A stretch of DNA of 25,577 nucleotides from Bugula neritina (taxonomy: Eukaryota > Animalia > Bryozoa). The translations under genes and the position numbers were made by a program. This document shows, piece by piece, positions 1 to 19,106 of the stretch. Positions within the stretch are counted from its first letter, which is position 1; every line of letters begins with the position of its first letter. The DNA is taken from positions 1 through 25,577 of the forward strand of contig CAXIUT010000065.1 of assembly GCA_964035545.1 (NCBI GenBank). The letters are read 5' to 3'. The notes below the pieces were generated by a model. The model did not search any database and had not been told where the DNA came from. It was given only the letters and a program-made list of their open reading frames with translations.

Positions 1-383
1 ATGCGGGGCAGGGCGGCTGACTGGCTGCATTGCTCCAGGAGCTTGTTGACGGTGCTGCGGGCGAGGGGGCTTCCACGCTCGGACACAAAGAGCCAGGGCA
101 GCTCACTCTCACGCTCTCGAAGGTAACGCCTGAGAAGCCTCAGTTCGTCACCAGCAATCGGGTGCATCCCGTCGATCCCGTTCTTGGATCGCTTCACGAA
201 TACCGTGGCCTGATCGAGGTTCAACCGCTCAAGCTTGATATGGCAGAGCTCCGACACGCGCAGGCCGTGGCGGTAGAGCATCAGAATGATCAGCTCGTTG
301 CGAGCTGGATTTCTGGTCTTTCGTGCTGTTTTACGTAGGGCCTCGACCTCACTGGCCGTGACCCAGTTTTTCACCTTGTTCAT
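1..383 (-). CDS. Tyrosine recombinase, 5' part (cut by window edge; full copy at 17653..18192)
   Basis: Same sequence as 17810..18192; MNKVKNW start. Confidence 0.85.
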   Translation of the reverse strand, partial: MNKVKNWVTASEVEALRKTARKTRNPARNELIILMLYRHGLRVSELCHIKLERLNLDQATVFVKRSKNGIDGMHPIAGDELRLLRRYLRERESELPWLFVSERGSPLARSTVNKLLEQCSQSAALPR

Positions 384-466
384 GAAACTTTCTACAAAAT
401 ATAAGCTGACGTCCTGTCTGAGCCTTCCTGAAAGCCTAACAAAATAGGGCAGGGGGGTTACAGAAC

Positions 467-494
467 ATTCAACATTATATACATAATGTAGAAT
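467..494. other. Symmetric dif-like tyrosine recombinase core site (11-6-11)
   Basis: ATTCAACATTA-TATACA-TAATGTAGAAT; inverted arms with 1 mismatch, extendable to 464..497. The minus strand reads TGTATA TAATGTTGAAT versus E. coli dif TGTATA TTATGTTAAAT. Lies directly upstream of the recombinase gene. Confidence 0.7.
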
Positions 495-520
495 GTTTAA
501 AGCTCTGGCGAGAGAAAATT

Positions 521-548
521 TTGACATCCAAATAAGTATGTATATAAT
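521..548 (+). promoter_or_regulatory. Sigma70-type promoter of the TA-Fic operon
   Basis: TTGACA-N16-TATAAT, 24 nt upstream of ATG 573. Confidence 0.75.
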
Positions 549-572
549 AGTGGTGTAATTTAATATGGTGAT

Positions 573-842
573 ATGCAAACTATGGGAAATGTAAAGAGAA
601 CCTTCACCCTTCCTGATGAGGTGAGCCAGGAACTTGATGAAGTGATCCCAAATAGGGAGCGTTCAAAGTTTATCGCAATGACTTTGCAGGAGGCTTTGCG
701 TCAGAAAAAACGTGATGAGCTTATGAAGCTTCTAGATGATCTGCCGCGTGATAAATCTCTGGATGGGGTGCAGGCAGAGGATGTGCTGCGCGAAATCCGC
801 GATACCCGCGCCGATGAAATACTTTCTAACTCTCGCCCATGA
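573..842 (+). CDS. CopG/ribbon-helix-helix antitoxin (VapB-like)
   Basis: KRTFTLPDEVSQELD...RSKFIAMTLQEAL RHH pattern; ATGA overlap with the PIN gene. Confidence 0.85.
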   Translation: MQTMGNVKRTFTLPDEVSQELDEVIPNRERSKFIAMTLQEALRQKKRDELMKLLDDLPRDKSLDGVQAEDVLREIRDTRADEILSNSRP

Positions 843-1285
843 AGCATAAAATCATAGTACCCGATGCAAATGTCGCAGTAAAAATTCTCCACACTGAAGC
901 TGACACTGAACAAGCTCGTGCCCTGTTTCGTTCCTGCGCAGAGCACGGAACCAAGATTTTGGTCCCTGAGCATTTTCTCTATGAAGTGGTGAATGTATGC
1001 CAGCGTGTCAAAGTTGGGGTTGATGATGTTCTGGACTTCTACGAAGCATTGAGATCGTCAATTCTTACCGTGGTATCTCCGAACCGGGATATCTGGCAGA
1101 GAGCTGAACAGATTGCTCAAGATGGGCATCCAAACAGTGGCTTTCCATCGATCTATGACAGTATCTACCAAGCACTCGCGCTTGATGCTGGGGGCGTCTT
1201 TATAACTGCTGATAAACGCCACGTTGCAAAAACCCATCAACATGGTGGGGTGATGTTGCTCAGTGATTGGGCAGACGACAAATAA
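839..1285 (+). CDS. vapC: PIN-domain toxin (VapC family)
   Basis: IVPDANVAVK, YEVVNV, SIYDSIYQALA and FITADKR carry the acidic PIN motifs. Confidence 0.9.
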   Translation: MKHKIIVPDANVAVKILHTEADTEQARALFRSCAEHGTKILVPEHFLYEVVNVCQRVKVGVDDVLDFYEALRSSILTVVSPNRDIWQRAEQIAQDGHPNSGFPSIYDSIYQALALDAGGVFITADKRHVAKTHQHGGVMLLSDWADDK

Positions 1286-1297
1286 CCATGCGATACT

Positions 1298-2296
1298 ATG
1301 AAAAACGATAGAAAAATTACATCTTTGGATCTGACGGAACCGATGGTTCCAATAAGCCCGAAGCAAAAAGAGGAGCTTGTGCAGCTGCGCGAGCGTTTTA
1401 TTCAATTAGTTTCTAAAATTATGAACGCTGAAAGTTTTGATCTTACTCAGGTCTATCCAGATACCGAAGACCTTGGCGAATTGTATGACCAACTTGATGA
1501 CTTAAAAAAATGCCTGGACAGCTTCAGACCATTCAATCCTGCTCAAGTGAAAAACCTCCGTGAGGTATATGATACTGAATACACGTACGCGTCTAACAGG
1601 ATCGAGGGAAATACTCTTACGCTCCAGGAGACCAGTTTTGTTATCAATGAAGGTCTGACGATCAGCAACAAGCCGATGAAGGATCATATTGAGGCGATCA
1701 ATCATAAAGTAGCCATCGACTTCATGCGCGAGCTTGCTGACCAGAATGAACCTATTAGTGAGCGAAACATCAAGCTGATACACGCACTGATTTTGCAGGG
1801 TATAGACCGTCAAGAGGCTGGAAAATATCGCGATGTGGTAGTTGGGATACGTGCTACTGATATCGTCTTCCCAGAACCCTTCATGGTTCCTGATCTTATG
1901 CGTGATCTCATAGACTTCTATGAAGAGCATAAGGACGAGTTTCACCCAGTGAAACTTGCGGCGCAGATGCACGCTAGGCTGGTGAATATCCATCCGTTCA
2001 TTGATGGAAATGGACGCACTTGCCGCTTGGTAATGAATCTAATTTTGTTGCAAAACGGTTATCCACTCACAATTTTTGCACCTGACGCGGATGCAAGACA
2101 GACATATTTTGATGCGCTCAACCAGACACGCGACACTGAAGATCAATCACACTTCGAGCTCTTCGCGGCAAAAAATGTCAAACGATGGGCGATGGAATAC
2201 CTCTCGATGCTTGCCCCGAATATCGGGGAAAACGAACAAAAAAAAGGCTACTACTACTTCAAGAAAGTCGAGCCATATCTACGGCATACAAAATAA
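1298..2296 (+). CDS. Fic family protein (class II, intramolecular inhibitory helix)
   Basis: Catalytic motif HPFIDGNGRTCR; inhibitory motif SNRIEGN N-terminal to it. Confidence 0.95.
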   Translation: MKNDRKITSLDLTEPMVPISPKQKEELVQLRERFIQLVSKIMNAESFDLTQVYPDTEDLGELYDQLDDLKKCLDSFRPFNPAQVKNLREVYDTEYTYASNRIEGNTLTLQETSFVINEGLTISNKPMKDHIEAINHKVAIDFMRELADQNEPISERNIKLIHALILQGIDRQEAGKYRDVVVGIRATDIVFPEPFMVPDLMRDLIDFYEEHKDEFHPVKLAAQMHARLVNIHPFIDGNGRTCRLVMNLILLQNGYPLTIFAPDADARQTYFDALNQTRDTEDQSHFELFAAKNVKRWAMEYLSMLAPNIGENEQKKGYYYFKKVEPYLRHTK

Positions 2297-2302
2297 CCAA
2301 AC

Positions 2303-2330
2303 TTTCAACATTATATTTATTTTGTGGAAA
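2303..2330. other. Second, hybrid/degenerate dif-like site
   Basis: TTTCAACATTA-TATTTA-TTTTGTGGAAA; left arm plus TA matches 468..479 (ttcaacattata); 6 nt after the Fic stop. Confidence 0.5.
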
Positions 2331-2404
2331 AGGCAAAAGAAATGGGTGTCTCAAGAGGAACCGTCTACAAAGCAACTGCCCAATTTATAATCTCCGGCCT
2401 TTAA
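2324..2404 (+). pseudogene. C-terminal HTH remnant of a serine resolvase/invertase
   Basis: Translates VEKAKEMGVSRGTVYKATAQFIISGL*, a Hin/resolvase-type recognition helix with no catalytic N-terminus. Confidence 0.6.
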
Positions 2405-2452
2405 CCTGATTTGTTTGCGGGGATGATAACACCCCTCACGCCTGCCAAAATC

Positions 2453-3481
2453 TTACTTCAAAAACTCTGCCAATACGGCCGCTTCGTATGCCTTAACGCT
2501 CATCCGTGCTGACGGGCCATAGCTTTCGAAGCCCGTCTCCAACTGTGGGAACAGCTCAAGGATTTCGTTGCGCGTTGCTACATCCAGCGCGGACCAACCC
2601 ATTTCACCTGGGTGGAAGCTTTCTGTGGCAGACCCTTCGGCAAAGATGATCTCGTGTTGATCGAACAGGATGTGGAAATATTCCACTTCGCCGCCTTCGT
2701 CACGGGTAATCGTTTTGTCGTTGATCAGGGCCTTGGCAGGGGCCAAAACTTCGGCCTCGCCAAAGAGCAGCTCTGCACGCCATCCTTCCAGAACCATACG
2801 GTGCTGAGGAGAGACGCGAAGATCACGGGTGTTGCCCAATGTGCCTGCGGCGATCTTGATTGGGGCCAGTTTGCCAAGGGCCGCGCGTTTGGTGGATCCG
2901 ATCCAGCGGATTGGCTGCATCCCATTGTCGCGGGTGCGCACCATCATGCCTTCGGCCAGATCCTGCACGGCAACTTCGCCTTGATTCGTGTCAATCATCG
3001 TGTCGCGGGCAAAGCAGACGGCGGTTAAAGACGCATTATCAAGTGTAAATACGTCAGCGCCATTAGTGGACCCAATTCTAATGCCTGTGATATCGGATGC
3101 TGCTGTGAAAGTGATCGTTGCCGTTTGGTAATCAAGACCAGCACTATAAACTGCATCAAAAGTTCCCAGCACATTGCCGTCTTGATCTTGCAAACTCAGT
3201 TGAGAATCGCTTCCTGAACTGCGGCTCCCGGCATCATAGTCAATTGTAAATGTATATTCGGTGCCTGTCGTCAGTGGGGTTGTTAAGGTCTGCTCCATCA
3301 TTTCCCCTATGACCATAACCCAGTCATCCCCGTCCGTGGCCCCACCTGGCGCACCCATGCTGGTTAGGCCTCGGTTCAAGTCAGCTGTTCCAACAGCATT
3401 TGTCCATTCAGGTGGAGCTGTGCTGTATACCACGCCTGTGTGTGGGCCTTCGAAGCTGCCATTTCTAAGTAGTTCAGTCAT
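2453..3481 (-). CDS. Hint-domain protein copy 1 (N-terminal carbohydrate-binding-like jelly roll + Hint_2/BIL domain)
   Basis: Hint starts at C156 (VCFARDTMIDT); LRVSPQHR block; YFHILFDQHEIIFAEG..TESFHPG; N-domain runs LLRNGSFE...LDNASL; RBS AAGGA. Confidence 0.92.
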   Translation of the reverse strand: MTELLRNGSFEGPHTGVVYSTAPPEWTNAVGTADLNRGLTSMGAPGGATDGDDWVMVIGEMMEQTLTTPLTTGTEYTFTIDYDAGSRSSGSDSQLSLQDQDGNVLGTFDAVYSAGLDYQTATITFTAASDITGIRIGSTNGADVFTLDNASLTAVCFARDTMIDTNQGEVAVQDLAEGMMVRTRDNGMQPIRWIGSTKRAALGKLAPIKIAAGTLGNTRDLRVSPQHRMVLEGWRAELLFGEAEVLAPAKALINDKTITRDEGGEVEYFHILFDQHEIIFAEGSATESFHPGEMGWSALDVATRNEILELFPQLETGFESYGPSARMSVKAYEAAVLAEFLK

Positions 3482-3733
3482 TTGTTGTATCCTTCTTTCA
3501 CCTTAAACAGGCTTCAACATGATGTGTCAGATTTAGATCATTCACTTTAGTGATCGTGTGCTTCTCTTTCCTCGAAACGGATCATTAATTAATCTTTAGT
3601 TTTTAATTTGGGCAGATTTGTAATCGAATTTGGGCGTGCTTGTGGTCAAATTTGGACCAGTGAGGCCAATGGGCAGATATTAGGTGGCTCAAGCTTAGAG
3701 CGTTTCAACCGTAACCGCCTAAGGTTGGATACC

Positions 3734-3763
3734 AAAAAAGGGCGGCCCTTGGGCCGCCCTTTT
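3734..3763. terminator. Bidirectional intrinsic terminator downstream of Hint copy 2
   Basis: aaaaaaGGGCGGCCcttgGGCCGCCCtttt; gives a U6 tract on the minus strand. Confidence 0.85.
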
Positions 3764-3807
3764 GAAACTACGAAACGTTTCGCTTTTAATCTGATTTGTT
3801 GTGGAGA

Positions 3808-3842
3808 TTGGAGTGTAGCCAATTCAATTGACTACACCCCAA
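3808..3842 (-). other. Long palindromic hairpin (REP-like) in the 3' UTR of Hint copy 2
   Basis: ttggagtgtagccaatt-c-aattgactacaccccaa; both mismatches become G.U pairs on the minus strand. Confidence 0.65.
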
Positions 3843-3872
3843 GACGCAATAAACCCCACTGCTACCAAGATC

Positions 3873-4901
3873 TTACTTCAAAAACTCTGCCAACACGGCC
3901 GCTTCGTATGCCTTAACGCTCATCCGCGCGGACTGACCATAGCTTTCGAAGTCCGTCTCCAACTGTGGGAACAGTTCAAGGATTTCGTTGCGCGTTGCGG
4001 CATCCAGTGCGGACCAGCCCATTTCACCTGGGTGAAAGCTTTCTGTGGCAGACCCTTCGGCAAAGATGATCTCGTGTTGATCGAACAGGATGTGGAAATA
4101 TTCCACCTGACCGCCTTCGTCACGGGTAATCGTTTTGTCGTTGATCAGGGCCTTGGCAGGGGCCAAAACTTCGGCCTCGCCAAAGAGCAGCTCTGCACGC
4201 CATCCTTCCAGAACCATACGGTGCTGAGGAGAGACGCGAAGATCACGGGTGTTGCCCAATGTGCCTGCGGCGATCTTGATTGGGGCCAGTTTGCCAAGGG
4301 CCGCGCGTTTGGTGGATCCGATCCAGCGGATTGGCTGCATCCCATTGTCGCGGGTGCGCACCATCATGCCTTCGGCCAGATCCTGCACGGCAACTTCGCC
4401 TTGATTCGTGTCAATCATCGTGTCGCGGGCAAAGCAGACGGCGGTTAAAGACGCATTATCAAGTGTAAATACGTCAGCGCCATTAGTGGACCCAATTCTA
4501 ATGCCTGTGATATCGGATGCTGCTGTGAAAGTGATCGTTGCCGTTTGGTAATCAAGACCAGCACTATAAACTGCATCAAAAGTTCCCAGCACATTGCCGT
4601 CTTGATCTTGCAAACTCAGTTGAGAATCGCTTCCTGAACTGCGGCTCCCGGCATCATAGTCAATTGTAAATGTATATTCGGTGCCTGTCGTCAGTGGGGT
4701 TGTTAAGGTCTGCTCCATCATTTCCCCTATGACCATAACCCAGTCATCCCCGTCCGTGGCCCCACCTGGCGCACCCATGCTGGTTAGGCCTCGGTTCAAG
4801 TCAGCTGTTCCAACAGCATTTGTCCATTCAGGTGGAGCTGTGCTGTATACCACGCCTGTGTGTGGGCCTTCGAAGCTGCCATTTCTAAGTAGTTCAGTCA
4901 T
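3873..4901 (-). CDS. Hint-domain protein copy 2
   Basis: 342 aa; differs from copy 1 at 4 C-terminal residues. Confidence 0.92.
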   Translation of the reverse strand: MTELLRNGSFEGPHTGVVYSTAPPEWTNAVGTADLNRGLTSMGAPGGATDGDDWVMVIGEMMEQTLTTPLTTGTEYTFTIDYDAGSRSSGSDSQLSLQDQDGNVLGTFDAVYSAGLDYQTATITFTAASDITGIRIGSTNGADVFTLDNASLTAVCFARDTMIDTNQGEVAVQDLAEGMMVRTRDNGMQPIRWIGSTKRAALGKLAPIKIAAGTLGNTRDLRVSPQHRMVLEGWRAELLFGEAEVLAPAKALINDKTITRDEGGQVEYFHILFDQHEIIFAEGSATESFHPGEMGWSALDAATRNEILELFPQLETDFESYGQSARMSVKAYEAAVLAEFLK

Positions 4902-5153
4902 TTGTTGTATCCTTCTTTCACCTTAAACAGGCTTCAACATGATGTGTCAGATTTAGATCATTCACTTTAGTGATCGTGTGCTTCTCTTTCCTCGAAACGG
5001 ATCATTAATTAATCTTTAGTTTTTAATTTGGGCAGATTTGTAATCGAATTTGGGCGTGCTTGTGGTCAAATTTGGACCAGTGAGGCCAATGGGCAGATAT
5101 TAGGTGGCTCAAGCTTAGAGCGTTTCAACCGTAACCGCCTAAGGTTGGATACC

Positions 5154-5183
5154 AAAAAAGGGCGGCCCTTGGGCCGCCCTTTT
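5154..5183. terminator. Bidirectional intrinsic terminator downstream of Hint copy 3
   Basis: Identical to 3734..3763. Confidence 0.85.
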
Positions 5184-5227
5184 GAAACTACGAAACGTTT
5201 CGCTTTTAATCTGATTTGTTGTGGAGA

Positions 5228-5262
5228 TTGGAGTGTAGCCAATTCAATTGACTACACCCCAA
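5228..5262 (-). other. Palindromic hairpin in the 3' UTR of Hint copy 3
   Basis: Identical to 3808..3842. Confidence 0.65.
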
Positions 5263-5292
5263 GACGCAATAAACCCCACTGCTACCAAGATC

Positions 5293-6321
5293 TTACGACA
5301 AAAACTCTGCCAATACGGCAGCTTCTTGTCCCTTAACGCTCATCCGTGCTGCCAGGCCATAGCTGTCGAAATCAGTTTCCAGCTCTGGGAACAGCTCAAG
5401 GATTTCGTTGCGCGTTGCGGCATCCAGTGCGGACCAGCCCATTTCACCTGGGTGAAAGCTTTCTGTGGCAGACCCTTCGGCAAAGATGATCTCGTGTTGA
5501 TCGAACAGGATGTGGAAATATTCCACTTCGCCGCCTTCGTCACGGGTAATCGTTTTGTCGTTGATCAGGGCCTTGGCAGGGGCCAAAACTTCGGCCTCGC
5601 CAAAGAGCAGCTCTGCACGCCATCCTTCCAGAACCATACGGTGCTGAGGAGAGACGCGAAGATCACGGGTGTTGCCCAATGTGCCTGCGGCGATCTTGAT
5701 TGGGGCCAGTTGGCCTCGGGCCGCGCGTTTGGTGGATCCGATCCAGCGGATTGGCTGCATCCCATTGTCGCGGGTGCGCACCATCATGCCTTCGGCCAGA
5801 TCCTGCACGGCAACTTCGCCTTGATTCGTGTCAATCATCGTGTCGCGGGCAAAGCAGACGGCGGTTAAAGACGCATTATCAAGTGTAAATACGTCAGCGC
5901 CATTAGTGGACCCAATTCTAATGCCTGTGATATCGGATGCTGCTGTGAAAGTGATCGTTGCCGTTTGGTAATCAAGACCAGCACTATAAACTGCATTAAA
6001 AGTTCCCAGCACATTGCCGTCTTGATCTTGCAAACTCAGTTCAGAATCGGCTGGTGTACTGCGGCTCCCGGAATCATAGTCAATTGTAAATGTATATTCG
6101 GTGCCTGTCGTCAGTGGGGTTGATAAAGTTTGCTCTATCATTTCCCCTGCGATCCAAATCCAGTCATCCCCGTCCGTGGCCCCACCTGGCGTGCCCATGC
6201 TGGGTACGCCTCGGTTCAAGTCAGCTGTTCCAACAGCATTTGTCCATTCAGGTGGAGCTGTGCTGTATTCCACGCCTGTGTGTGGGCCTTCGAAGCTGCC
6301 ATTTCTAAGTAGTTCAGTCAT
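5293..6321 (-). CDS. Hint-domain protein copy 3 (divergent N-domain)
   Basis: 342 aa; 16 substitutions in residues 18-109 versus copies 1/2. Confidence 0.92.
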   Translation of the reverse strand: MTELLRNGSFEGPHTGVEYSTAPPEWTNAVGTADLNRGVPSMGTPGGATDGDDWIWIAGEMIEQTLSTPLTTGTEYTFTIDYDSGSRSTPADSELSLQDQDGNVLGTFNAVYSAGLDYQTATITFTAASDITGIRIGSTNGADVFTLDNASLTAVCFARDTMIDTNQGEVAVQDLAEGMMVRTRDNGMQPIRWIGSTKRAARGQLAPIKIAAGTLGNTRDLRVSPQHRMVLEGWRAELLFGEAEVLAPAKALINDKTITRDEGGEVEYFHILFDQHEIIFAEGSATESFHPGEMGWSALDAATRNEILELFPELETDFDSYGLAARMSVKGQEAAVLAEFLS

Positions 6322-6392
6322 TTGTTGTATCCTTGTCTAATATAACACTATGGCGAGACCTTTATGCGCAAATATCCGTCTGCACAAGCCAG

Positions 6393-6413
6393 TCATATCG
6401 ATAATCGATATGA
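6393..6413. promoter_or_regulatory. Perfect palindromic operator candidate in the divergent promoter region
   Basis: TCATATCGAT-A-ATCGATATGA. Confidence 0.55.
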
Positions 6414-6434
6414 TGATTAATGGATATATTTACG

Positions 6435-6479
6435 AGATATGCTATTTACAGTTTTGCAAGATATGCCATTTTACAGTTT
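6435..6479 (+). repeat. Imperfect 20/21-bp direct repeat upstream of the NusA-NTD-like gene
   Basis: agatatgctatttacagttt (6435) and agatatgccattttacagttt (6459). Confidence 0.6.
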
Positions 6480-6506
6480 ATTATCCCTAAAAAGAAGGAA
6501 ATGTAG

Positions 6507-6923
6507 ATGGATATGCTAAAAAATACTGGCCCTATCGACCTGAACACGCGGGCCGATTTGCGTCCACACATCGAAAATTATGCATCAGACAATGATATGA
6601 CATTTGATGACGCATTAGATCGAATCAGCACCCTATATGTGCAGGCCGCCCATTCGGTTCATGGATCCCAATATGATTTTCGCGCCACATTGAATGACGT
6701 AGGGCAAATCAAGCTGTTGCAGGTGTTAACTGTCGTAAGCACCGTAACAGACGAGGATCGGCAAGTATCTCTGACCAATGCCCGAAAAACCTATCCAAAT
6801 ATTGAATTGGGCGGGTATATTTTGAACCAGATCACCCCTGTGGAACCTGAAGGCTTATTCGATACTCCTGCGACACAAACTATAACAGTTAAAGGCATGA
6901 CCTTAAAACCTGTTCGCGGCTAA
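6507..6923 (+). CDS. Stand-alone NusA N-terminal-domain-like protein
   Basis: QAAHSVHGSQYDFRATLNDVGQIKLLQVLTVVSTVTD..RQVSLTNARKTYPNIELGGYILNQITP aligns by eye with the alphaproteobacterial NusA-NTD pattern (KAARSRYG..NIRA.I...GEI.L.R.L.VVE.VED...QI.L..AR...P..LGDFI...LPP). No S1/KH domains; RBS AAGGA. Confidence 0.7.
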   Translation: MDMLKNTGPIDLNTRADLRPHIENYASDNDMTFDDALDRISTLYVQAAHSVHGSQYDFRATLNDVGQIKLLQVLTVVSTVTDEDRQVSLTNARKTYPNIELGGYILNQITPVEPEGLFDTPATQTITVKGMTLKPVRG

Positions 6924-6926
6924 GGC

Positions 6927-6958
6927 TACGTCTGCGACCCTTGCGGGCCGCAGACGTA
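6927..6958. terminator. Stem-loop directly after the NusA-NTD-like gene
   Basis: tacgtctgcg-acccttgcgggc-cgcagacgta; no strong U tract on the + strand. Confidence 0.5.
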
Positions 6959-6963
6959 AAGCC

Positions 6964-7128
6964 ATGCTTGGCTCATCGCCTCCAGCAGCCTGTTATTGTG
7001 CCGCACAGGATTATATCCCAATCGTGATCACGCGATCCGGGGACAAGACCTCTGCCGTGCTTATTTCACTGGCCGAATACGAATCATTGGTGAAAACACA
7101 GCATCTTTTAAAACATCGGGTTAAGTAG
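6964..7128 (+). pseudogene. Phd/YefM antitoxin remnant
   Basis: 7000..7113 translates AAQDYIPIVITRSGDKTSAVLISLAEYESLVKTQHLLK, the YefM core; the N-terminal strand/helix, the C-terminus and the toxin are missing. Confidence 0.65.
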
Positions 7129-7762
7129 AGGCGATGGAGGGGCCGGGATGGTCTATCCAGGCAACGGCAATGCTGTCATCTGCCGCGCGATGGGGAATGG
7201 CATAGCCTTGCGCTGTTTTCAGTGCTGGGTTTTGCCGCGCGGCGCGCAGTCCTTCTGTGAGCCCCCCCGATCTGATCAGCGCACGCTCTTCGGCATCCGC
7301 AGTGGATGTGAGCCAGGCATTGAGGTGGCGCAGCATATCCGCTTGGGTACTGACCCCAAGGGCTGCGAAAGCAATAGGCTCATCGACAAGGCGCAGCACT
7401 TCGCCAATTCGGGTTCTGTCCGTTGCCTCAACAATCTCTAGCTGCCCTTGTTCGGTAAAGGCGCACAGGATGACCGTCTGCTTCTTGGTGATTTGCGGCA
7501 AGAGTGTGGATAATTCTTCAACCGCCCGTGGCGGGGGGGATGCGTCTTTAAGCATGTCCATCGTGGTATGCGTGATCAACCATGCGTTGTCACCCAGCCG
7601 CATTCTGACCCATCCTGCCTCACGCAGATTATTCAGCGCGCGCCAAATACCCATACGGGACAGCTCGGGCAGAGCACTTTGCAAGTCTCTCAAAGCCACT
7701 GGAGCATTTTGCGCGACGGCGCGATAAACTGCCAAAGTGCGGGTGGTTGGGGTGCCGGCCAT
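7121..7762 (-). CDS. IclR-like winged-HTH transcriptional regulator
   Basis: RTLAVYRAVAQNAPVALRDLQSALPELSRMGIWRALNNLREAGWV is an IclR-type HTH; degenerate C-terminal effector domain; start site uncertain. Confidence 0.65.
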   Translation of the reverse strand: MAGTPTTRTLAVYRAVAQNAPVALRDLQSALPELSRMGIWRALNNLREAGWVRMRLGDNAWLITHTTMDMLKDASPPPRAVEELSTLLPQITKKQTVILCAFTEQGQLEIVEATDRTRIGEVLRLVDEPIAFAALGVSTQADMLRHLNAWLTSTADAEERALIRSGGLTEGLRAARQNPALKTAQGYAIPHRAADDSIAVAWIDHPGPSIAST

Positions 7763-8056
7763 ATTGGGAAACACTTTTTTTGGGGGTCGTTTGCACATTG
7801 TTGCACAAATCTGGGAGTACTAGAACCTGACGTCCGGAAAATTTGTCAGAGGGTTACATTTGCCTGTCGGGCACGCATGCAAATGCATCTCAGCTCCAGC
7901 CAGACCAGTCACGACCGCATTGCTTTAGTGTCGTGGTGTACGCTACCAAGGCCCACTCGTTAATTGTGCAAAAAAAACCGTTCATGCTCAGATCTAAGCA
8001 TATACATATTTGTTACAACTATACTACCCTCCCTATTTTCCGGTACTCCGTTAGAA

Positions 8057-8629
8057 ATGGACGAAACTTTCCTTCTCGCCATAAACGCCTCGATCTTGTG
8101 GGGCGTTTATGTTGGCCTGCTGACTTGGCTCTTGCGCTTCAAAACACTGGTGTTGGTCCTGCTGCTGGCTCCTTTAGTGATCGGGTCCACTTTCCGGCAC
8201 ATTGCCGGGATGCCAGAGTTGATCGGCTTCTACGGCACGTCGCTGCTTTATGGCGCTCCGGGTATCATCGCTGGTATGCTCTACGCGGATTATCAGCGGA
8301 CGAAGGCATATTTCGCCCGTATTTCAAAGACCTCATTCCTTGCCCGTGGCGGGATCGGGCTGTCATCGGTGTATCTGCTGGGGTATTTCGGACAGAAGAT
8401 CATTTTTGAGAACCCAATGGTCGAACTGGTTCTTGGTTACATCAAGGGTGGGGACCGTGCGAAAGAGATCGTCTCCCGGGTCGATTATGACGGGGCGCTC
8501 ACTGCTGGCGGGGTCATTGTGGCTTGTGCGGGGGTGCTCGCCTTCAATACTTACCGGGAACACCGCAGGGCAGGGCCGGAAAACGTCCCAGCCATCAAAG
8601 AAGAACAAGAAACAGGCATTTCCTCATGA
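8057..8629 (+). CDS. Polytopic membrane protein (about 5 TM), function unknown
   Basis: Several hydrophobic segments; probable start MDETFLL; ATGA overlap with the next gene. Confidence 0.75.
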   Translation: MDETFLLAINASILWGVYVGLLTWLLRFKTLVLVLLLAPLVIGSTFRHIAGMPELIGFYGTSLLYGAPGIIAGMLYADYQRTKAYFARISKTSFLARGGIGLSSVYLLGYFGQKIIFENPMVELVLGYIKGGDRAKEIVSRVDYDGALTAGGVIVACAGVLAFNTYREHRRAGPENVPAIKEEQETGISS

Positions 8630-9660
8630 AGAACCCCAAGCTCATTTTTGCCATTGTCCTTGGCGTGGTTTTCTGCTTCGCAGGCTATAACCTCTGGTCC
8701 TATTTCAAGGAACAACAGGCCATCCAGCTCGAAGAGGATCGTCTGGCCGAAGAGCGCCGGGTCCAGCGCGAACAGGAACGGCAAGCTCAGATCACAGCGG
8801 AAGAAGAAGAACGTCGCCAGCGTGAAGCTGAGGCTGAAGCGCGGCGTTTGGAAGAGGAACGCCTTGCTGAAGAACGGCGTCTGGCCCGGGAAGCTGAAGA
8901 AGAAGCCCGTCGCCAAGAGGCTGAACGCCTACGGGCAGAACAAGAAGCCGAACGGCTCGCAGAACGTATTTCCCGCGCTCGCACCGTTGAGCGGATCGAA
9001 GAGGTTCCCCAGGAACTGATAGACCAGATGAACGGTCTGTCCCGTCGCTACATTGCCGATCATCCCTACGAATTCCTGACCCAGACTTTCGATGGCAGAA
9101 CCTTTGGGCCTCGCACGAATTTCGAAAAGCTGATCCAAGGCGACACTGATGCCTTGATGCTGGTCTCCGCAATTTCAGGGAACACCAAGCACCTGGAAGC
9201 GCTGATCGGCATTGGTATGGATATAAACCGGGGGAATGAAGCAGGTTACACGCCACTCATGTTCGCTGCCGCATACAACACGCCAGAAGTCGTCAGTTTT
9301 CTGGTGGGGCAGGGGGCAGATATTTCAGCCAAGGCCTATGTCCAGGACCTGACCCCATTGCATGTAGCCGCGCTCTTCAACCCGAACCCCGATGTGATCA
9401 ACGCCCTGGTCGATGCTGGTGCTGATCTTGAGGCGGTCACAGAAACCCCCATGACACCCCTTCTACTGGCCTGCTCAGACAACCAAAATCTGGAAGTCGC
9501 TGAACGGCTCGCGGAGCTGGGGGCCGACATTGAAGCCTATTCCCCCGATGGCCTCACAACCAAGGGATTGTGTGAACAACGTATCCGTGGGGAAGGGGAT
9601 CGGTACATCAAGATCACCGATGAGGTGAATGAGCGTATTTTGAGCCGCCTCACGCCATAG
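8626..9660 (+). CDS. Membrane-anchored coiled-coil + ankyrin-repeat protein
   Basis: MKNPKLIFAIVLGVVFCFAGY anchor; E/R/A-rich helix; repeats GYTPLMFAA, LTPLHVAA, MTPLLLAC with ..GAD ends. Confidence 0.88.
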   Translation: MKNPKLIFAIVLGVVFCFAGYNLWSYFKEQQAIQLEEDRLAEERRVQREQERQAQITAEEEERRQREAEAEARRLEEERLAEERRLAREAEEEARRQEAERLRAEQEAERLAERISRARTVERIEEVPQELIDQMNGLSRRYIADHPYEFLTQTFDGRTFGPRTNFEKLIQGDTDALMLVSAISGNTKHLEALIGIGMDINRGNEAGYTPLMFAAAYNTPEVVSFLVGQGADISAKAYVQDLTPLHVAALFNPNPDVINALVDAGADLEAVTETPMTPLLLACSDNQNLEVAERLAELGADIEAYSPDGLTTKGLCEQRIRGEGDRYIKITDEVNERILSRLTP

Positions 9661-10008: not shown

Positions 10009-10275
10009 ATGCTGACGATTAAGCTATCCAAGCGAGCGGACAAAGCGCTCGGTAAAATACAAACCAAGCAAGCGAAACAGATTGCTGCACGTATCAAACA
10101 GTTGGCTGACGATTCAGAAGCTTTGCCTACGGTCGAGCTGAAAGGATACGCGCCATGGCGGCGAGCAAAGTCCGGTGAATACCGTATCATCTACAAGATT
10201 GATGGGGATATTTTGAGTGTTGCCTTGGTTGGTAAGCGCAACGACGATGAGATTTACCGCCTCATTGAACCATGA
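10009..10275 (+). CDS. relE: RelE/ParE family toxin (orphan)
   Basis: IKLSKRADKALGKI...LKGYAPWRRAKSGEYRIIYKI...VGKRNDDEIY. Confidence 0.88.
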   Translation: MLTIKLSKRADKALGKIQTKQAKQIAARIKQLADDSEALPTVELKGYAPWRRAKSGEYRIIYKIDGDILSVALVGKRNDDEIYRLIEP

Positions 10276-10685
10276 GAGCTGACCAAGCAAAAACCATCCC
10301 CCTTGATCTCTATCTTGAGCACCAGGGGTACAAACCCGCAAAAACCCGAATGGGTGGGCGCGAGCTTTGGTATAAGAGCCCCATTCGCAGCGGTGACAGC
10401 TCTCCATCCTTCAAAGTCGATACCATCATCAACAAATGGTACGATCACGGCATTGGGCGTGCTGGCAACACACTCGATCTTGCTGTTGAACTATGCTGTT
10501 CTTCCGTTCGTGACGCTCTGCGTCACTTGGAACGCACCGGGTTGTACTCACCTTACGGATATCGCCAGGCATCCAACCCCACGCACCTGCCGGAGCTATT
10601 GGATCAAAAACGAGCTGCTATTGAAAAAGAAAAAGATGATGGCACGGCACTGAAGCTGCTTCACAAAGGGCCGGTCAAGCACCCT
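10272..10685 (+). pseudogene. DNA primase-like (CHC2-like + Toprim) gene, 5' part, interrupted by transposon
   Basis: ELWYKSPIR..DSSPSFKVD...WYDHGIGRAGNTLDL; the frame continues after the TSD as HP|ALLQYLDKRKI. Confidence 0.85.
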
Positions 10686-10723
10686 GGGGTCGAGTGGGGC
10701 TGAGTGCAGAAAACCCCGTTAAG
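10686..10723 (+). repeat. Tn3 left inverted repeat
   Basis: GGGGTCGAGTGGGGCTGAGTGCAGAAAACCCCGTTAAG. Confidence 0.95.
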
Positions 10724-10758
10724 GGTTTTGGCGGGCGTTTGAAATTTGAGATTGGCTC

Positions 10759-11310
10759 TCAGGTCTCGTTCGTTGCGAGATATCGATAGATGGTAGCCTT
10801 TGAGAGGCTGTAGTGAGCCATCAGGTCTTTGATCAGCGTTCCAGCTGCGCGCCTTTGGCGAAGCTCAGCGATCTGATCTTCTGAAAGCGCGGGCCGTTTG
10901 CCAAACTGAACGCCGCGATCCTTCGCCTTTTTGATCCCGTCCATTTGACGCTCGGCACGGATTTCGGTTTCGAACTGTCCGATGGCACCAAGCATGTTGA
11001 ACAGGAGCCGCCCGGTTGCGTCGGATGTGTCGATGTTCTGATCGAGGACGACCAGATCGACGCCTTTCTCGCGCAGGGTCTCGGCGATCTGACACAGGTG
11101 TAGCGTTGAGCGCGCCAATCGGTCGATGCGCGTGACGATGAGTTGATCTCCGCCGCGGATGTAATTCAGGCACTCTTTCAGCTGAGGGCGGGCATCGGTC
11201 GTGCCACTGCGCTTCTCTTCGAAGAGCTTGTCGCAGCTATCCAGCTTTTCGCGCTGCACGTCCAGAGATTGTCCAACAGAACTGACGCGGGCGTATCCGA
11301 CTTTGGCCAT
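10759..11310 (-). CDS. tnpR: Serine resolvase
   Basis: GYARVSS, RPQL, TRIDRLARS, C-terminal HTH SKATIYRYL. Confidence 0.95.
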   Translation of the reverse strand: MAKVGYARVSSVGQSLDVQREKLDSCDKLFEEKRSGTTDARPQLKECLNYIRGGDQLIVTRIDRLARSTLHLCQIAETLREKGVDLVVLDQNIDTSDATGRLLFNMLGAIGQFETEIRAERQMDGIKKAKDRGVQFGKRPALSEDQIAELRQRRAAGTLIKDLMAHYSLSKATIYRYLATNET

Positions 11311-11434
11311 GGGTTCTCATTTAGGTTTTGGATTTGTGCGACATCCATATTGAGACATTGAAAAAGACATGGCAAGCGGATGGTCTCAGTTTCTACAGTT
11401 TTAAAGACCCTCCTCTGACAGAAAGACGATCCCC
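11311..11434. promoter_or_regulatory. Probable res site / divergent promoters
   Basis: Lies between divergent tnpR and tnpA; tctca/tgaga half-site-like motifs; subsites not resolved. Confidence 0.5.
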
Positions 11435-14335
11435 ATGGCACACCGAGCGGTCCTGACCGCGCGACAACGCGCGGCCCTTTTCGACCTTCCGACGGATGAG
11501 GCGTTGCTGCTTCGGCACTACACCCTATCCGATGAAGACATCAATTTTATCCGTACTCGTCGTCGCCCCGAGAACCAGATTGGCATCGCGCTGCAGCTTT
11601 GTGCCCTTCGATATCCGGGGCGGCTGTTGAGGCCCGGAGAAATCATCCCCAAAGAAATGTCTGACTACATCGCTGCCCAACTTGGGGTCAAACCCGACGA
11701 CCTTCTGCCCTATGCCGAACGAGAGAACACGCGCCATGAACATCTGGAAACACTGCGCAAGATTTACGGATACGAGATGTTCAAGGGAAAGCGGATCAAG
11801 CAGATGCGTACCTGGTTGGATCAGAATGCTGAAGGTGCGCAATCAAGCGAAGGCCTGGTCCGCGCTTTTGTGGAAGAATGCCGTCGGCGACAGATCATTC
11901 TGCCGGGCATAACGGTCATAGAACGGCATTGCGCCGACGCACTCGTTGCTGCTGAGCGCCGGATCGAAACCCGTATTGCCGCGCGGCTCGACAGCCCGAT
12001 GCGTACCCGCCTCGACGAATTATTGAACGAAGAAACGGACCACCGAACCACCAGGTTCGTCTGGTTACGTCAGTTTGAGCCAGGCAAGAACTCCGCAGAC
12101 ATCAACCGTCTGCTGGATCGATTGGAATTTCTGAAGGCGGTTTCCCTGGTTCCGACAATCCTCGATGACATCCCTGCGCATCGGATCACGCGGCTGCGCC
12201 GACAGGGGGAGCGCTACTTTGCGAAAGGACTGCGCGACATCACCAGTGACCGCCGCCTTGCCATTCTGGCCGTGTGTGTCGTGGAATGGACTGCGGCCAT
12301 CGCGGATACCGTTGTGGAGACACATGACAGGATCGTGGGTAGCATCTGGCGGGATGCAAAACGGATTTGCGAGACAAGTGTAGCCGAAGCCCAAGCGGCA
12401 ATCGCAGAGACCCTGGCCGGGTTCGAGGCCCTGGGGTCAAGCCTGTTGATGGCCAGGGGGGATGATGCCGCCCTCGCCGGTGCAGTTGACACTTCTTGTG
12501 GCTGGACAAGCCTTGAAAGCCTGGTCGCGCAAGCAACGCAGCTTCAGACAACGGTAAAAGCAGATGTGCTGGCCCATGTGTCCAAGGGTTTCCACCGGTT
12601 CAAACGCTACGCGCGGCGTATGCTGGCGGCTTTGGATATGACATGTGCCAGTGTGGCTCAGCCTTTGGTCACGGCAGCGCACATCATCCGTGACAAACAG
12701 GATATCCCCGTCACTTCGCTGTCTTTCTTGCTGCCACGTTCGAAATGGCGGCCCCAATTCCGCGCGCCTGATGTCGATCAAGAGCGGCTGTGGGTTGTCG
12801 CCGTCCTGTGCCACCTGCGCGATGCGTTCCGTTCTGGCGATATCTGGCTTCCGCATTCGCGGCGTCATGCCGATATGAAGCAAACCCTTGTCTCCATTGA
12901 TGCCGCCCGCACCATGGGGCTTTCAATGCCACTGGAACCAGAGATCTGGATCGCGGATCGAAAGCGCCGCTTGGAAGATGGATTGAAACGGTTGGTCAAG
13001 GCCGTGCGCTCCAAAACCCTGCCGAGCGGGGTCATTGAAGACGGCGTATTGCGCGCCGAACGTCTTGAGGCCGATGTGCCAGAAGAGGCCAGTGATCTCG
13101 TCCTCGATCTTTACCGCCGTCTGCCCGAGGCGCGGATCACCGATATCCTCACAGAGGTCGACAACGATACCTGCTTTACCGAGGCCTTCACGCATCTGCG
13201 CACCGGTGCCCCGTGTCGCGACAAGATCGGCCTGCTCAACGTTATCTTGGCTGAGGGCCTCAATCTGGGCCTGAGCAAAATGGCAAATGCCACCAGCACC
13301 CATGACTTTATCCAACTCTCCCGCTTGTCGCGCTGGCATGTCGAAAGTGAGGCCATGGCCCGCGCCCTGGCCACGGTGATCGACGCGCAAGCCCGATTGC
13401 CGATGGCCCAGTTCTGGGGGGCAGGCACAACTGCTTCAAGCGATGGTCAGTTCTTCCCGACCACGCGCCAGGGCGAAGCGATGAACCTCATCAACGCGAA
13501 ATATGGCAACGAGCCCGGCATCAAAGCCTACACCCACGTCTCCGACCAATATGCACCTTTCGCCACGCAGGTCATTCCAGCCACGGTGAGCGAAGCGCCG
13601 TACATACTGGATGGTTTGCTGATGAACGAGGCAGGGAAGCAGGTCAAAGAGCAATATGCCGACACCGGAGGCTTCACTGATCTCGTCTTCGCCGCCACGT
13701 CCCTGCTCGGGTATCGTTTCCATCCCCGCATTCGCGACCTGGCCTCCAAGCGGTTGCATGTGTTTGACCTCCGCGCTGTTCCCAAAGAGCTGAAAGGGTT
13801 GACCGGGGACAAGATCCGGGAAGCGAAGATCGTTGAAAACTGGCCGGACGTTTTGCGCTGCATCGCTACAATGCTGTCAGGCCGAATGCAGCCAAGTCAC
13901 CTCCTCAAGAAATTGGCCGCGCGCCCGAGGCAACATGATCTGGCGTTGACCCTGCGGGAGATCGGCCGGGTCGAACGCACATTGTTCATCATCGAATGGC
14001 TGCTCGACACCGACATGCAGCGCCGCGTCAATATCGGCTTGAACAAGGGAGAAGCACATCACGCCCTGAAAGGTGCCCTCCGGATCGGGCGTCAGGGAGA
14101 AATCCGTGACCGTACCACCGAAGGTCAACACTTCCGCATCGCTGGCCTCAATCTGCTGACCGCCATCATCATTTACTGGAATTCCAAACAGCTCGGCAAC
14201 GCCGTGACAAAGCGACAGCGGGCAGGACTGGACTGCCCACCCGAACTCCTCGCCCACATCTCACCGCTTGGATGGGCACACATCATTCTAACGGGTGAAT
14301 ACCGCTGGCCGAAAATCCCGGTTCAAAATCCTTAA
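11435..14335 (+). CDS. tnpA: Tn3-family transposase
   Basis: 966 aa; SSDGQ, DTGG, LNKGE (DDE) and HISPLGWAHI; stop codon inside the right IR. Confidence 0.97.
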   Translation: MAHRAVLTARQRAALFDLPTDEALLLRHYTLSDEDINFIRTRRRPENQIGIALQLCALRYPGRLLRPGEIIPKEMSDYIAAQLGVKPDDLLPYAERENTRHEHLETLRKIYGYEMFKGKRIKQMRTWLDQNAEGAQSSEGLVRAFVEECRRRQIILPGITVIERHCADALVAAERRIETRIAARLDSPMRTRLDELLNEETDHRTTRFVWLRQFEPGKNSADINRLLDRLEFLKAVSLVPTILDDIPAHRITRLRRQGERYFAKGLRDITSDRRLAILAVCVVEWTAAIADTVVETHDRIVGSIWRDAKRICETSVAEAQAAIAETLAGFEALGSSLLMARGDDAALAGAVDTSCGWTSLESLVAQATQLQTTVKADVLAHVSKGFHRFKRYARRMLAALDMTCASVAQPLVTAAHIIRDKQDIPVTSLSFLLPRSKWRPQFRAPDVDQERLWVVAVLCHLRDAFRSGDIWLPHSRRHADMKQTLVSIDAARTMGLSMPLEPEIWIADRKRRLEDGLKRLVKAVRSKTLPSGVIEDGVLRAERLEADVPEEASDLVLDLYRRLPEARITDILTEVDNDTCFTEAFTHLRTGAPCRDKIGLLNVILAEGLNLGLSKMANATSTHDFIQLSRLSRWHVESEAMARALATVIDAQARLPMAQFWGAGTTASSDGQFFPTTRQGEAMNLINAKYGNEPGIKAYTHVSDQYAPFATQVIPATVSEAPYILDGLLMNEAGKQVKEQYADTGGFTDLVFAATSLLGYRFHPRIRDLASKRLHVFDLRAVPKELKGLTGDKIREAKIVENWPDVLRCIATMLSGRMQPSHLLKKLAARPRQHDLALTLREIGRVERTLFIIEWLLDTDMQRRVNIGLNKGEAHHALKGALRIGRQGEIRDRTTEGQHFRIAGLNLLTAIIIYWNSKQLGNAVTKRQRAGLDCPPELLAHISPLGWAHIILTGEYRWPKIPVQNP

Positions 14336-14368
14336 CGGGGTTTTCTGCACTCAGCCCCACTCGACCCC
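14331..14368 (-). repeat. Tn3 right inverted repeat
   Basis: Exact reverse complement of 10686..10723. Confidence 0.95.
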
Positions 14369-14373
14369 ACCCT

Positions 14374-14903
14374 GCCCTTCTTCAGTATCTGGACAAACGC
14401 AAGATAGCTTCAACGCTGATCGAAAAGTACCTTCACCAGATACATTTCACTTCACCAGGCCAGTCCAAAAATATTTCGCTATCGGTTGGCCTTCTGGATC
14501 GGCCACGAGGCCAGAAATTCGCTCTTCAAGGGTTTTGTTGGGGTTGGGAAGGACATCACCTACCTCGAAGCGCCTAACAGCTCTGTATGCGCCGTTTTCG
14601 AGGGTTTTTTTCGATTTCTTGGCTTACCTAAGTTTTCACAATCATTCTGAGCCACCATTTTCGGTGGTTGTGCTCAACTCAGGCGCTCTCAAGGCTCGTG
14701 CTGTAGCTCAGATACTTGAAGGCAAGTATGATGGGGTTCGTTTGTTTTTGGATAATGACCAGGGGGGTGATGCGGGAACAACTTACTTCCAGGAGCTTTT
14801 GGGGACGATTTCAGTTGATGACTGTCGTGATCAGTATCGTGGGTTTAAGGATTTCAATGAAATGACCATGAGTGACAGCCCTGGCTTTTCTTTTTCATCG
14901 TAG
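14374..14903 (+). pseudogene. Primase-like gene, 3' part (Toprim), three frameshifts
   Basis: Segments ALLQYLDKRKI / KYFAIGWP / GHEARNSLFKG..KDITY..VFEG / FDFLAY..FLDNDQGG..KDFNE change frame at about 14470, 14500 and 14608. Confidence 0.8.
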
Positions 14904-18192: not shown

Positions 18193-18275
18193 GAAACTTT
18201 CTACAAAATATAAGCTGACGTCCTGTCTGAGCCTTCCTGAAAGCCTAACAAAATAGGGCAGGGGGGTTACAGAAC

Positions 18276-18303
18276 ATTCAACATTATATACATAATGTAG
18301 AAT
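18276..18303. other. dif-like site (duplicate of 467..494)
   Basis: Repeat copy. Confidence 0.7.
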
Positions 18304-18329
18304 GTTTAAAGCTCTGGCGAGAGAAAATT

Positions 18330-18357: not shown

Positions 18358-18381
18358 AGTGGTGTAATTTAATATGGTGAT

Positions 18382-19094: not shown

Positions 19095-19106
19095 CCATGC
19101 GATACT

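What the first reader, a model, noticed from the sequence alone, without database searches (positions are those of the whole stretch)
6507..6923. Plasmid-encoded stand-alone NusA N-terminal domain
Seen: an intact 138-aa ORF with its own RBS and a downstream hairpin. Its residues line up by eye with the alphaproteobacterial NusA-NTD along most of its length (AA.S..GS...RA..N..G.I.L...L.VV.TV.D...Q..L..AR...P...LG..I....P, then G.....A.Q.I..K). It has no S1/KH RNA-binding domains and no rimP-nusA-infB context, and it is too divergent to be a fresh fragment of host nusA. Known: NusA-NTD binds the RNAP beta-flap tip/RNA exit channel and modulates hairpin pausing and termination; phage antiterminators co-opt NusA. 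Inference: a mobile NusA mimic or competitor that retunes termination, or a decoy against phage antitermination.
Basis: partly seen in the sequence, partly recalled or inferred. Interest (0 to 1): 0.85.

Follow-up and report, generated by a model that had tools for sequence, protein, structure and literature searches.

The report
Stand-alone NusA head paired with Hint protein
The 138-aa plasmid gene is a real, conserved, cut-down copy of the RNA-polymerase-binding head of NusA, but it lacks NusA's pausing helix and always sits beside a self-cleaving Hint-domain gene, so it probably serves that protein and not general transcription.

Summary
ORF 6507-6923 (+) is intact, with a GAAGGA ribosome-binding site 7 nt upstream and a 14-bp-stem hairpin downstream. 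It passes Pfam NusA_N (37.7 bits, cut-off 23.8), and its model matches only NusA among solved structures. The window is a 17,809-bp circular RepB/ParA plasmid read 1.4 times, lying in a eukaryote-sized assembly that holds no other NusA_N.

The ORF belongs to a small family of 113-151-aa proteins in roseobacters (Planktomarina, Ruegeria, Sulfitobacter, Shimia, Nereida, Ascidiaceihabitans). NCBI already auto-names them 'NusA N-terminal domain-containing protein'. The family turned up in 2 of 401 sampled genomes of that bacterial family.

Two new points:
- Homology to NusA stops exactly where helix H3/alpha4 begins. [quoted passage not shown]
- In all ten relatives whose surroundings could be read in full, and in the window, the gene is next to, or one gene from, a jelly-roll + Hint_2 self-cleaving protein. 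Three gene orders occur, and the two proteins co-diverge (Mantel r=0.60, p=0.002).

The best reading is a dedicated protein partner of the Hint_2 protein. An RNAP-directed NusA competitor remains possible but untested. I found no paper on this module.

The parts
6507..6923 (+). 138-aa stand-alone NusA-NTD 'head' protein. It keeps alpha1-alpha2-beta-beta-alpha3-beta, has no H3/alpha4 helix, and has its own N-terminal extension and a C-terminal beta-strand motif. A second copy from the wrap lies at 24316-24732.
6494..6499 (+). GAAGGA ribosome-binding site, 7 nt before the ATG
   Evidence: read from the sequence
6927..6958 (.). Hairpin directly after the stop codon: 14-nt arms, 4-nt loop, no T-run
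6393..6413 (.). 21-bp palindrome in the divergent promoter region. It is unique in the plasmid. 19 of its bases are identical in the matching intergenic region of the closest relatives (L003-L005), whose proteins are only 41% identical. Probably an operator; the binding protein is unknown.
6429..6479 (+). Two direct repeats with 24-25-nt spacing between the palindrome and the RBS
5293..6321 (-). Divergent neighbour, 342 aa: N-terminal 'NGSFE' jelly-roll domain, then Hint_2 (residues 155-292, Cys nucleophile in 'VCF'), then a conserved tail of about 50 aa
3873..4901 (-). Second tandem copy of the jelly-roll + Hint_2 gene (92% identical to the first)
2453..3481 (-). Third tandem copy of the jelly-roll + Hint_2 gene

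Best explanation
Shown: the ORF encodes a member of a small, roseobacter-restricted family of 113-151-aa proteins. The family derives from the globular head of the NusA N-terminal domain and has lost NusA's C-terminal helix H3/alpha4 and everything after it. The gene forms a mobile two-gene module with a protein built of a jelly-roll domain, a Hint_2 (bacterial intein-like) self-cleaving domain and a short conserved tail. Inferred: the protein has been taken over from transcription to serve as a dedicated protein partner of that Hint_2 protein. It would bind the Hint_2 protein with the surface that in NusA grips an amphipathic helix. It would then hold or tune the Hint_2 protein in the cytoplasm, for instance by preventing premature self-cleavage or preparing it for export. 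The closest relative's neighbour carries RTX repeats, which usually mark type I secreted proteins. I do not think it acts as a general NusA competitor.
For: Identity: Pfam NusA_N is above cut-off and all 21 aligned family members match it. Family profile against true roseobacter NusA NTDs gives hhalign probability 99.2%, E=8e-20. The same profile finds the true NusA in 385 of 401 genomes at E 1e-6 to 1e-22. The AF2 model has pLDDT 84.6, and its top 17 PDB hits and all atlas hits are NusA. Family: about 20 same-length clusters exist among 1.84 billion representative proteins. Module: Hint_2 is adjacent in Ruegeria, three Paracoccaceae MAGs, Sulfitobacter and five metagenome contigs, and one gene away in Planktomarina. 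These lie in unrelated chromosomal or mobile neighbourhoods. The closest relative has a divergent jelly-roll + RTX gene that runs off its contig. Background: one complete genome has only 4 Hint_2 genes and three others have none. Four modules have a stop/start overlap (Hint_2 then NusA-like), which suggests translational coupling. Identity matrices of the two proteins correlate (Mantel r=0.60, p=0.002). The NusA-like partner diverges faster (20-45% identity) than the Hint part (28-64%). In Planktomarina a RimJ/L-type acetyltransferase gene sits between the two, which also points to a protein-level role.
Against: No binding was shown. The single co-folding job gave no verdict (score 0.00; the partner folded poorly and the alignments were not used). 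In three modules, the window's included, the genes are divergent, an arrangement more typical of a regulator and its target. Most Hint_2 genes have no such partner, so the partner is not required for Hint_2 function in general. Partnered Hint_2 domains were not resolved as one clade. The co-divergence may only reflect shared inheritance of a linked pair.
Confidence: 0.42

Rival explanations
1. Specialised NusA paralogue acting on RNA polymerase. The head binds the beta flap tip. Because it lacks the pause helix, it displaces NusA and lowers hairpin pausing and termination, preferentially for the adjacent Hint_2 gene(s). This would be analogous to NusG paralogues that are encoded next to their target operons.
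For: The fold and the beta2/beta3 sheet region are conserved. In B. subtilis, flap-binding residues map to beta2/beta3. Deleting H3 abolishes pausing but has little effect on RNAP binding (PMC4357713). That is what a dominant-negative competitor would look like. The divergent arrangement in the window and its closest relatives includes a conserved palindrome. The array of Hint genes is separated by hairpin terminators.
Against: The cryo-EM structure places the flap-tip helix in a pocket made by alpha1, alpha2 and alpha4 (PMC5842316). Alpha4 is absent in the whole family. Alpha1 is unconserved and deleted in three members. There is no RNA- or DNA-binding domain to give gene specificity. Divergence is fast although the flap tip helix is described as highly conserved (PMC4357713). 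Overlapping stop/start coupling downstream of the supposed target occurs in four modules. A general NusA competitor should be costly to the cell.
Confidence: 0.25
2. Immunity or decoy protein. Either it protects the producer against the neighbouring Hint_2 protein as in polymorphic toxin systems, or it acts as a NusA look-alike that traps phage antiterminators.
For: Hint domains act as releasing peptidases in polymorphic toxins (general knowledge; reviews listed). The gene order Hint_2 then small gene, with overlap, occurs in four modules. Divergence is fast and the contexts are mobile, with TA genes, integrases and transposases nearby.
Against: No toxin domain follows the Hint domain, only a conserved tail of about 50 aa that unpartnered Hint_2 proteins also carry. 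The cargo is an N-terminal jelly roll. Gene order is reversed or divergent in most modules. There are no PADLOC or PHROG hits. Nothing links the locus to phage.
Confidence: 0.1
3. Acceptor or co-substrate of the Hint reaction. The thioester formed at the jelly-roll/Hint junction is resolved onto the NusA-like protein, or in its presence, producing a modified or ligated product.
For: Type A bacterial intein-like domains ligate flanking fragments through attack of a free amino group on the N-terminal thioester. Type B domains cleave without splicing (PMC4031507). The pairing is strict, and an acetyltransferase is present in the Planktomarina module.
Against: This is purely inferential. No conserved Cys, Lys or N-terminal motif stands out in the family, whose invariant residues are core positions.
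Confidence: 0.08
4. Decaying or functionless remnant of nusA that hitch-hikes on mobile DNA.
For: The family is rare (2 of 401 genomes). The window copy has no relative closer than 41% identity.
Against: Intact frames of constant length persist across about 20 clusters at 20-45% identity, with a conserved core and a family-specific C-terminal motif. One cluster has 123 members in Planktomarina. Linkage to one gene type is conserved.
Confidence: 0.03

Closest known systems
NusA N-terminal domain (Pfam PF08529; solved as 2KWP, 2MT4, 1HH2, and 6FLQ in complex with RNAP)
   Same: Homologous by sequence (hhalign 99.2%) and by predicted fold (TM 0.6-0.68). It shares alpha1-alpha2, the beta-sheet and alpha3 of the head.
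   Different: It has no helix H3/alpha4 with R104/K111 and no S1/KH/AR domains. Alpha1 is unconserved. It carries about 12 extra N-terminal residues and a C-terminal strand motif. It is not in a rimP-nusA-infB operon and always sits beside a Hint_2 gene.
Specialised paralogues of general elongation factors (NusG family: RfaH, LoaP, UpxY)
   Same: It is a cut-down or diverged copy of a universal elongation factor, sporadically distributed, often on mobile DNA, and encoded next to one particular gene.
   Different: Those paralogues keep the RNAP-binding NGN domain intact and have known recruitment sites. Here the RNAP-contacting elements are partly lost and no recruitment element is known. No NusA paralogue of this kind turned up in the literature searches.
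Bacterial intein-like (BIL) / Hint_2 autoprocessing proteins (the neighbour)
   Same: The neighbour has a strong Hint_2 match (about 175 bits) with the N-terminal Cys. It sits at the C-terminal end of a probably exported protein, as described for BIL domains.
   Different: No accessory protein turned up for BIL or Hint domains in the papers I searched. The strict pairing with a NusA-derived protein appears to be new.
Effector with a dedicated chaperone, or toxin with an immunity gene
   Same: A small, fast-evolving cytoplasmic protein is encoded beside a probably exported protein and co-diverges with it, sometimes with stop/start overlap.
   Different: There is no recognisable toxin domain, the gene order is variable, and the small protein's fold comes from a transcription factor.

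Membership tests
NusA_N domain (PF08529) | Profile match above the curated cut-off | tested here: met
   37.7 bits against 23.8. All 21 family members match at E<=0.01.
NusA_N domain (PF08529) | Alpha/beta head fold of solved NusA NTDs | tested here: met
   AF2 model pLDDT 84.6. Foldseek top 17 hits are all NusA; 2MT4 gives TM 0.60/0.66. Atlas hits are all NusA_N.
NusA_N domain (PF08529) | C-terminal helix H3/alpha4 with invariant R104 and K111, required for pause enhancement | tested here: not met
   Pfam match ends at profile position 94 of 119. hhalign homology ends at 'GRIA', the start of H3. R and K are invariant in true NusA and absent in the family. The model has no helix after residue 95.
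NusA_N domain (PF08529) | Binds the RNAP beta flap-tip helix | not testable with these tools
Residues reported for flap binding (F59, R61, E94, Q96; PMC4357713) are not conserved in the family, but they are also not conserved among true NusAs, so this is inconclusive.
Full-length NusA (TIGR01953) | NTD followed by S1 and two KH domains; score above the equivalog cut-off; rimP-nusA-infB context | tested here: not met
   34.3 bits against 253.4. The protein is 138 aa with no S1/KH. Its neighbours are Hint_2 and a Phd remnant.
Stand-alone 'NusA N-terminal domain-containing protein' family of roseobacters (defined here) | 113-151 aa, NusA head without H3, C-terminal I-x-N-x-x-I strand motif, Hint_2 gene adjacent | tested here: met
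   Alignment A2. E=3e-18 to the nearest member. The Hint_2 neighbour lies at 5293-6321.
Polymorphic toxin / immunity pair with Hint releasing domain | Toxin domain C-terminal to Hint, and immunity gene immediately downstream | tested here: not met
   Only a conserved tail of about 50 aa follows the Hint domain. The small gene lies downstream in only 4 of 10 relatives' modules.
Known anti-phage defence systems (PADLOC) / phage families (PHROGs) | Profile match | tested here: not met
   No hits for the ORF or the Hint_2 protein.

The most novel reading that the evidence does not exclude
The family is the first specialised NusA paralogue. Its head would still dock on the RNAP flap tip but lacks the pause helix, so it would locally cancel NusA-dependent pausing and termination for the neighbouring self-cleaving surface-protein genes. 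That would be a NusA counterpart of RfaH/LoaP, carried on mobile DNA.
Probability: 0.2. Interest if true: 0.8.

Novelty: new variant of a known kind. Interest (0 to 1): 0.6.

Why it matters
NusA is a nearly universal, essential elongation factor, and my literature searches turned up no described paralogues of it. This is a conserved, mobile family that keeps only the NusA head and is strictly tied to one kind of gene. Either outcome would be new. One possibility is the first accessory protein for a bacterial Hint/intein-like self-cleaving domain, built from a recycled transcription-factor module. The other is a gene-specific NusA antagonist. Both readings can be tested directly with two small soluble proteins. 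The Hint_2 proteins are common in marine roseobacters that live with algae and are themselves almost unstudied.

Tried and rejected
- The word-indexed protein search found nothing. Back-translated scans of genome and metagenome contigs with the window protein also found nothing. Alignments A2 and A3 were too diverse for that tool. Only the exhaustive phmmer search found the family.
- tblastn against 72,556 PLSDB plasmids gave no match at E<=1.
- The ESM-atlas search by features gave no usable hit.
- The single-sequence AF2 model was useless (pLDDT 36). The model built with the family alignment was good.
- Complex prediction of the ORF with the neighbouring Hint_2 protein gave no verdict (score 0.00; the partner folded poorly and the alignments were not used). 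This counts neither for nor against binding.
- dN/dS within the Planktomarina cluster could not be estimated, because there were only 1 synonymous and 1 non-synonymous difference.
- A tree of partnered and unpartnered Hint domains was unresolved. Only the four 'Hint then NusA-like' partners group together (90/88 support).
- A second profile hit in genome G192 proved to be a true nusA start at a contig end, not a family member.
- Long multi-stretch hits of the phmmer search (P0016, P0019, P0022) are adhesin-type repeat proteins that match the Thr/Val-rich C-terminus and are not relatives. P0017 is a NusA with four tandem NTDs.
- No RNA run holds the locus, so expression is untested.
- Literature searches for Hint domain with Roseobacter, PF13403, 'Hint domain-containing protein', and NusA paralogue/stand-alone found nothing on this module.

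Full report
**What is at 6507-6923.**
- The ORF is there as described: ATG at 6507, 138 codons, stop ending at 6923.
- GAAGGA lies 7 nt upstream of the ATG.
- A 14-nt-arm inverted repeat with a 4-nt loop begins 4 nt after the stop. No T-run follows it, so the consensus scan does not call it a terminator.
- The window is not linear. Bases 1-7768 are identical to 17810-25577, so it is a 17,809-bp circle read 1.4 times, and the ORF recurs at 24316-24732.
- The circle carries a RepB-like initiator (28.7% identity to annotated RepB proteins), ParA, a tyrosine recombinase, PIN and Fic genes, an ankyrin-repeat protein and a Tn3-family transposon. The transposon is 87% identical to copies on Sulfitobacter plasmids.
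- The contig belongs to a 216-Mb, 321-contig assembly. In that assembly the Pfam NusA_N model finds nothing but this ORF. The plasmid therefore comes from a roseobacter-type bacterium associated with a eukaryote, and the bacterium's chromosome is not in the assembly.

**Is it a NusA N-terminal domain?** Yes.
- Pfam NusA_N scores 37.7 bits against a cut-off of 23.8 (E=2.8e-9), covering residues 22-109 and profile positions 6-94 of 119.
- The full-length NusA model scores far below its cut-off (34.3 against 253.4).
- phmmer against PDB sequences finds only NusA.
- With the family alignment, AlphaFold2 gives pLDDT 84.6, above 90 for residues 20-110.
- The 17 best Foldseek hits in the PDB are all NusA. 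TM is about 0.6 both ways for the isolated NTD structures 2MT4 and 2KWP. All ESM-atlas neighbours carry NusA_N.
- A profile of the family against a profile of ten true roseobacter NusA NTDs gives hhalign probability 99.2%, E=8e-20.

**It belongs to a conserved stand-alone family.**
- The word-indexed search was blank. The exhaustive phmmer search of 1.84 billion representatives gave 36 hits.
- About 20 of these are proteins of 113-151 aa that align end to end with the query at 23-36% identity.
- The remaining hits are genuine NusA fragments, which score 94-140 bits over the whole Pfam profile, or unrelated repeat proteins.
- Named members come from Planktomarina temperata (a cluster of 123 sequences), Ruegeria, Sulfitobacter, Shimia, Nereida and Ascidiaceihabitans. 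NCBI's pipeline already calls several of them 'NusA N-terminal domain-containing protein'.
- All 21 aligned members match NusA_N.
- The family is rare. Its profile found the ordinary NusA in 385 of 401 sampled genomes of the bacterial family, but a stand-alone copy in only two, both Planktomarina-like.
- None of the 72,556 PLSDB plasmids has a detectable homologue, so the plasmid location is unusual for the family.

**What it has lost.**
- Homology to NusA ends at the residues aligned with 'GRIA', the first turn of the long C-terminal helix. This helix is called H3 in B. subtilis and alpha4 in E. coli.
- In true roseobacter NusAs the Arg and Lys of this helix are invariant. They correspond to R104 and K111 in both E. 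coli and B. subtilis numbering.
- In the family the segment is replaced by a Pro-rich linker and a short strand with an I-x-N-x-x-I pattern. The model shows no helix after residue 95.
- Ma et al. 2015 (PMC4357713) showed that deleting H3, or changing R104 or K111, abolishes pause enhancement while hardly affecting RNAP binding. They mapped flap binding to F59, R61, E94 and Q96 on strands 2 and 3.
- Guo et al. 2018 (PMC5842316) see the flap-tip helix in a hydrophobic pocket made by alpha1, alpha2 and alpha4.
- In the family alpha4 is gone. Alpha1 has no conserved column and is deleted in three members.
- The four strand residues are not conserved either. The authors note that they vary among true NusAs too, so that point is inconclusive.
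- The protein therefore cannot enhance pausing the way NusA does. Whether it still docks on RNAP is open.

**The decisive context.** Every family member with enough flanking DNA sits next to a Hint_2 (PF13403) gene.

| Source | Arrangement |
|---|---|
| Ruegeria (L006), a 441-kb metagenome contig (L049), L052, Sulfitobacter (L054) | Hint_2 then the NusA-like gene, with overlapping stop/start |
| L045, L047, L053 | NusA-like gene then Hint_2 |
| Planktomarina | NusA-like gene, RimJ/L-type acetyltransferase, Hint_2 |
| Window and three Paracoccaceae MAGs (L007-L009) | Divergent |

- The closest relative (41% identity) has a divergent gene with the same N-terminal jelly-roll domain followed by at least 8 RTX repeats. 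That gene runs off the contig.
- The flanking genes differ in every case and often include integrases, transposases or toxin-antitoxin genes. The pair therefore moves as a unit.
- Hint_2 genes are not frequent enough to explain this by chance. One complete Planktomarina-like genome has four, of which one is partnered, and three other genomes of the family have none.
- Unpartnered Hint_2 loci on plasmids and in that genome have no NusA-like ORF nearby.
- The partners share one architecture: an N-terminal 'NGSFE' jelly roll, Hint_2 with its Cys nucleophile, and a conserved tail of about 50 aa.
- Pairwise identities of the NusA-like proteins and of their partners' Hint + tail regions correlate (Mantel r=0.60, p=0.002).
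- The NusA-like protein is the faster-evolving of the two.

**How it most likely works.**
- Type B bacterial intein-like domains catalyse cleavage at their ends without splicing (PMC4031507). The neighbour is therefore probably cut at the jelly-roll/Hint junction.
- The RTX variant in the closest relative suggests export by a type I system. This step rests on general knowledge of RTX proteins and is an inference.
- The following observations favour a protein-protein role over a transcriptional one:
  - the strict pairing;
  - stop/start overlap in four modules;
  - co-divergence of the two proteins;
  - fast evolution of the NusA-like partner;
  - an acetyltransferase inside one module;
  - loss of the pause helix;
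  - no nucleic-acid-binding domain.
- The NusA head is a module that grips an amphipathic helix. My best reading (about 0.4) is that it now grips part of the Hint_2 protein and controls its cleavage, stability or export.
The divergent arrangement in the window fits this rival.
- A 21-bp palindrome at 6393-6413 also fits the rival. It is unique in the plasmid, and 19 of its bases are identical in the relatives L003-L005 despite 41% protein identity. It shows that the divergent promoter region is regulated by some DNA-binding dimer.
- Immunity or decoy roles, a role as acceptor in the Hint reaction, and a dead remnant are less likely, for the reasons given under rivals.

**Novelty.** The existence of such proteins is recorded only as an automatic database name. 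Searches of the paper library for Hint domains in roseobacters, PF13403, and NusA paralogues or stand-alone NTDs found nothing about this family or its pairing with Hint_2. I rate it a new variant of a known kind: a known domain in a new, conserved, stand-alone form with a new obligatory partner.

**Earlier notes.** Notes from this scan on the same window (s1-435114, s1-435115) had proposed a coupling between this ORF and the Hint array. The comparative data here confirm the coupling.

Noticed in passing
window 1-7768 = 17810-25577: The window is a 17,809-bp circular replicon read 1.4 times, with an exact 7,768-bp overlap. It lies in a 216-Mb, 321-contig eukaryote-sized assembly that contains no bacterial nusA. 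It is therefore a plasmid of an associated or contaminating roseobacter-type bacterium whose chromosome is absent from the assembly.
   Followed up: partly
window 2453-6321 (-): Three tandem jelly-roll + Hint_2 genes, 92-98% identical. They are separated by two identical spacers of about 390 bp, each with a GC-rich hairpin followed by a T-run. The differences between copies cluster in the N-terminal jelly-roll domain.
   Followed up: partly
window 10685-14369: A Tn3-family element (resolvase and 966-aa transposase) bounded by 46-nt inverted repeats (98% complementary) and 87% identical to copies on Sulfitobacter plasmids. The ORFs on either side (10272-10703, weak primase-like match; 14295-14903, Toprim_2) look like two halves of one primase-like gene split by the insertion. 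The exact junction and target duplication were not resolved.
   Followed up: partly
window 6964-7128 (+): A 54-aa ORF that matches only the middle of the Phd/YefM antitoxin profile (positions 25-56 of 74, just under the cut-off), with no toxin gene beside it. Probably a remnant of a toxin-antitoxin pair.
   Followed up: no
window 8524-9660 (+): A 378-aa protein with a hydrophobic N-terminal segment, a long Glu/Arg/Ala-rich stretch (possibly coiled coil) and ankyrin repeats. This is a eukaryote-like repeat protein of the kind seen in host-associated bacteria.
   Followed up: no
window 839-2296 (+): A PIN-domain gene directly followed by a Fic/DOC gene. A tyrosine recombinase (17653-18387) and ParA (16863-17441) lie upstream of them on the circle.
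   Followed up: no
P0017: A 739-aa metagenomic NusA with four tandem NusA_N domains before its KH domains. This is either an assembly artefact or a real multi-head NusA.
   Followed up: no
L007: In the Paracoccaceae MAG context the module lies near a DUF4123 gene (a type VI effector-chaperone family) with a downstream 347-aa unknown, and near Fic and CcdAB genes. This looks like a mobile island rich in conflict-type genes.
   Followed up: no
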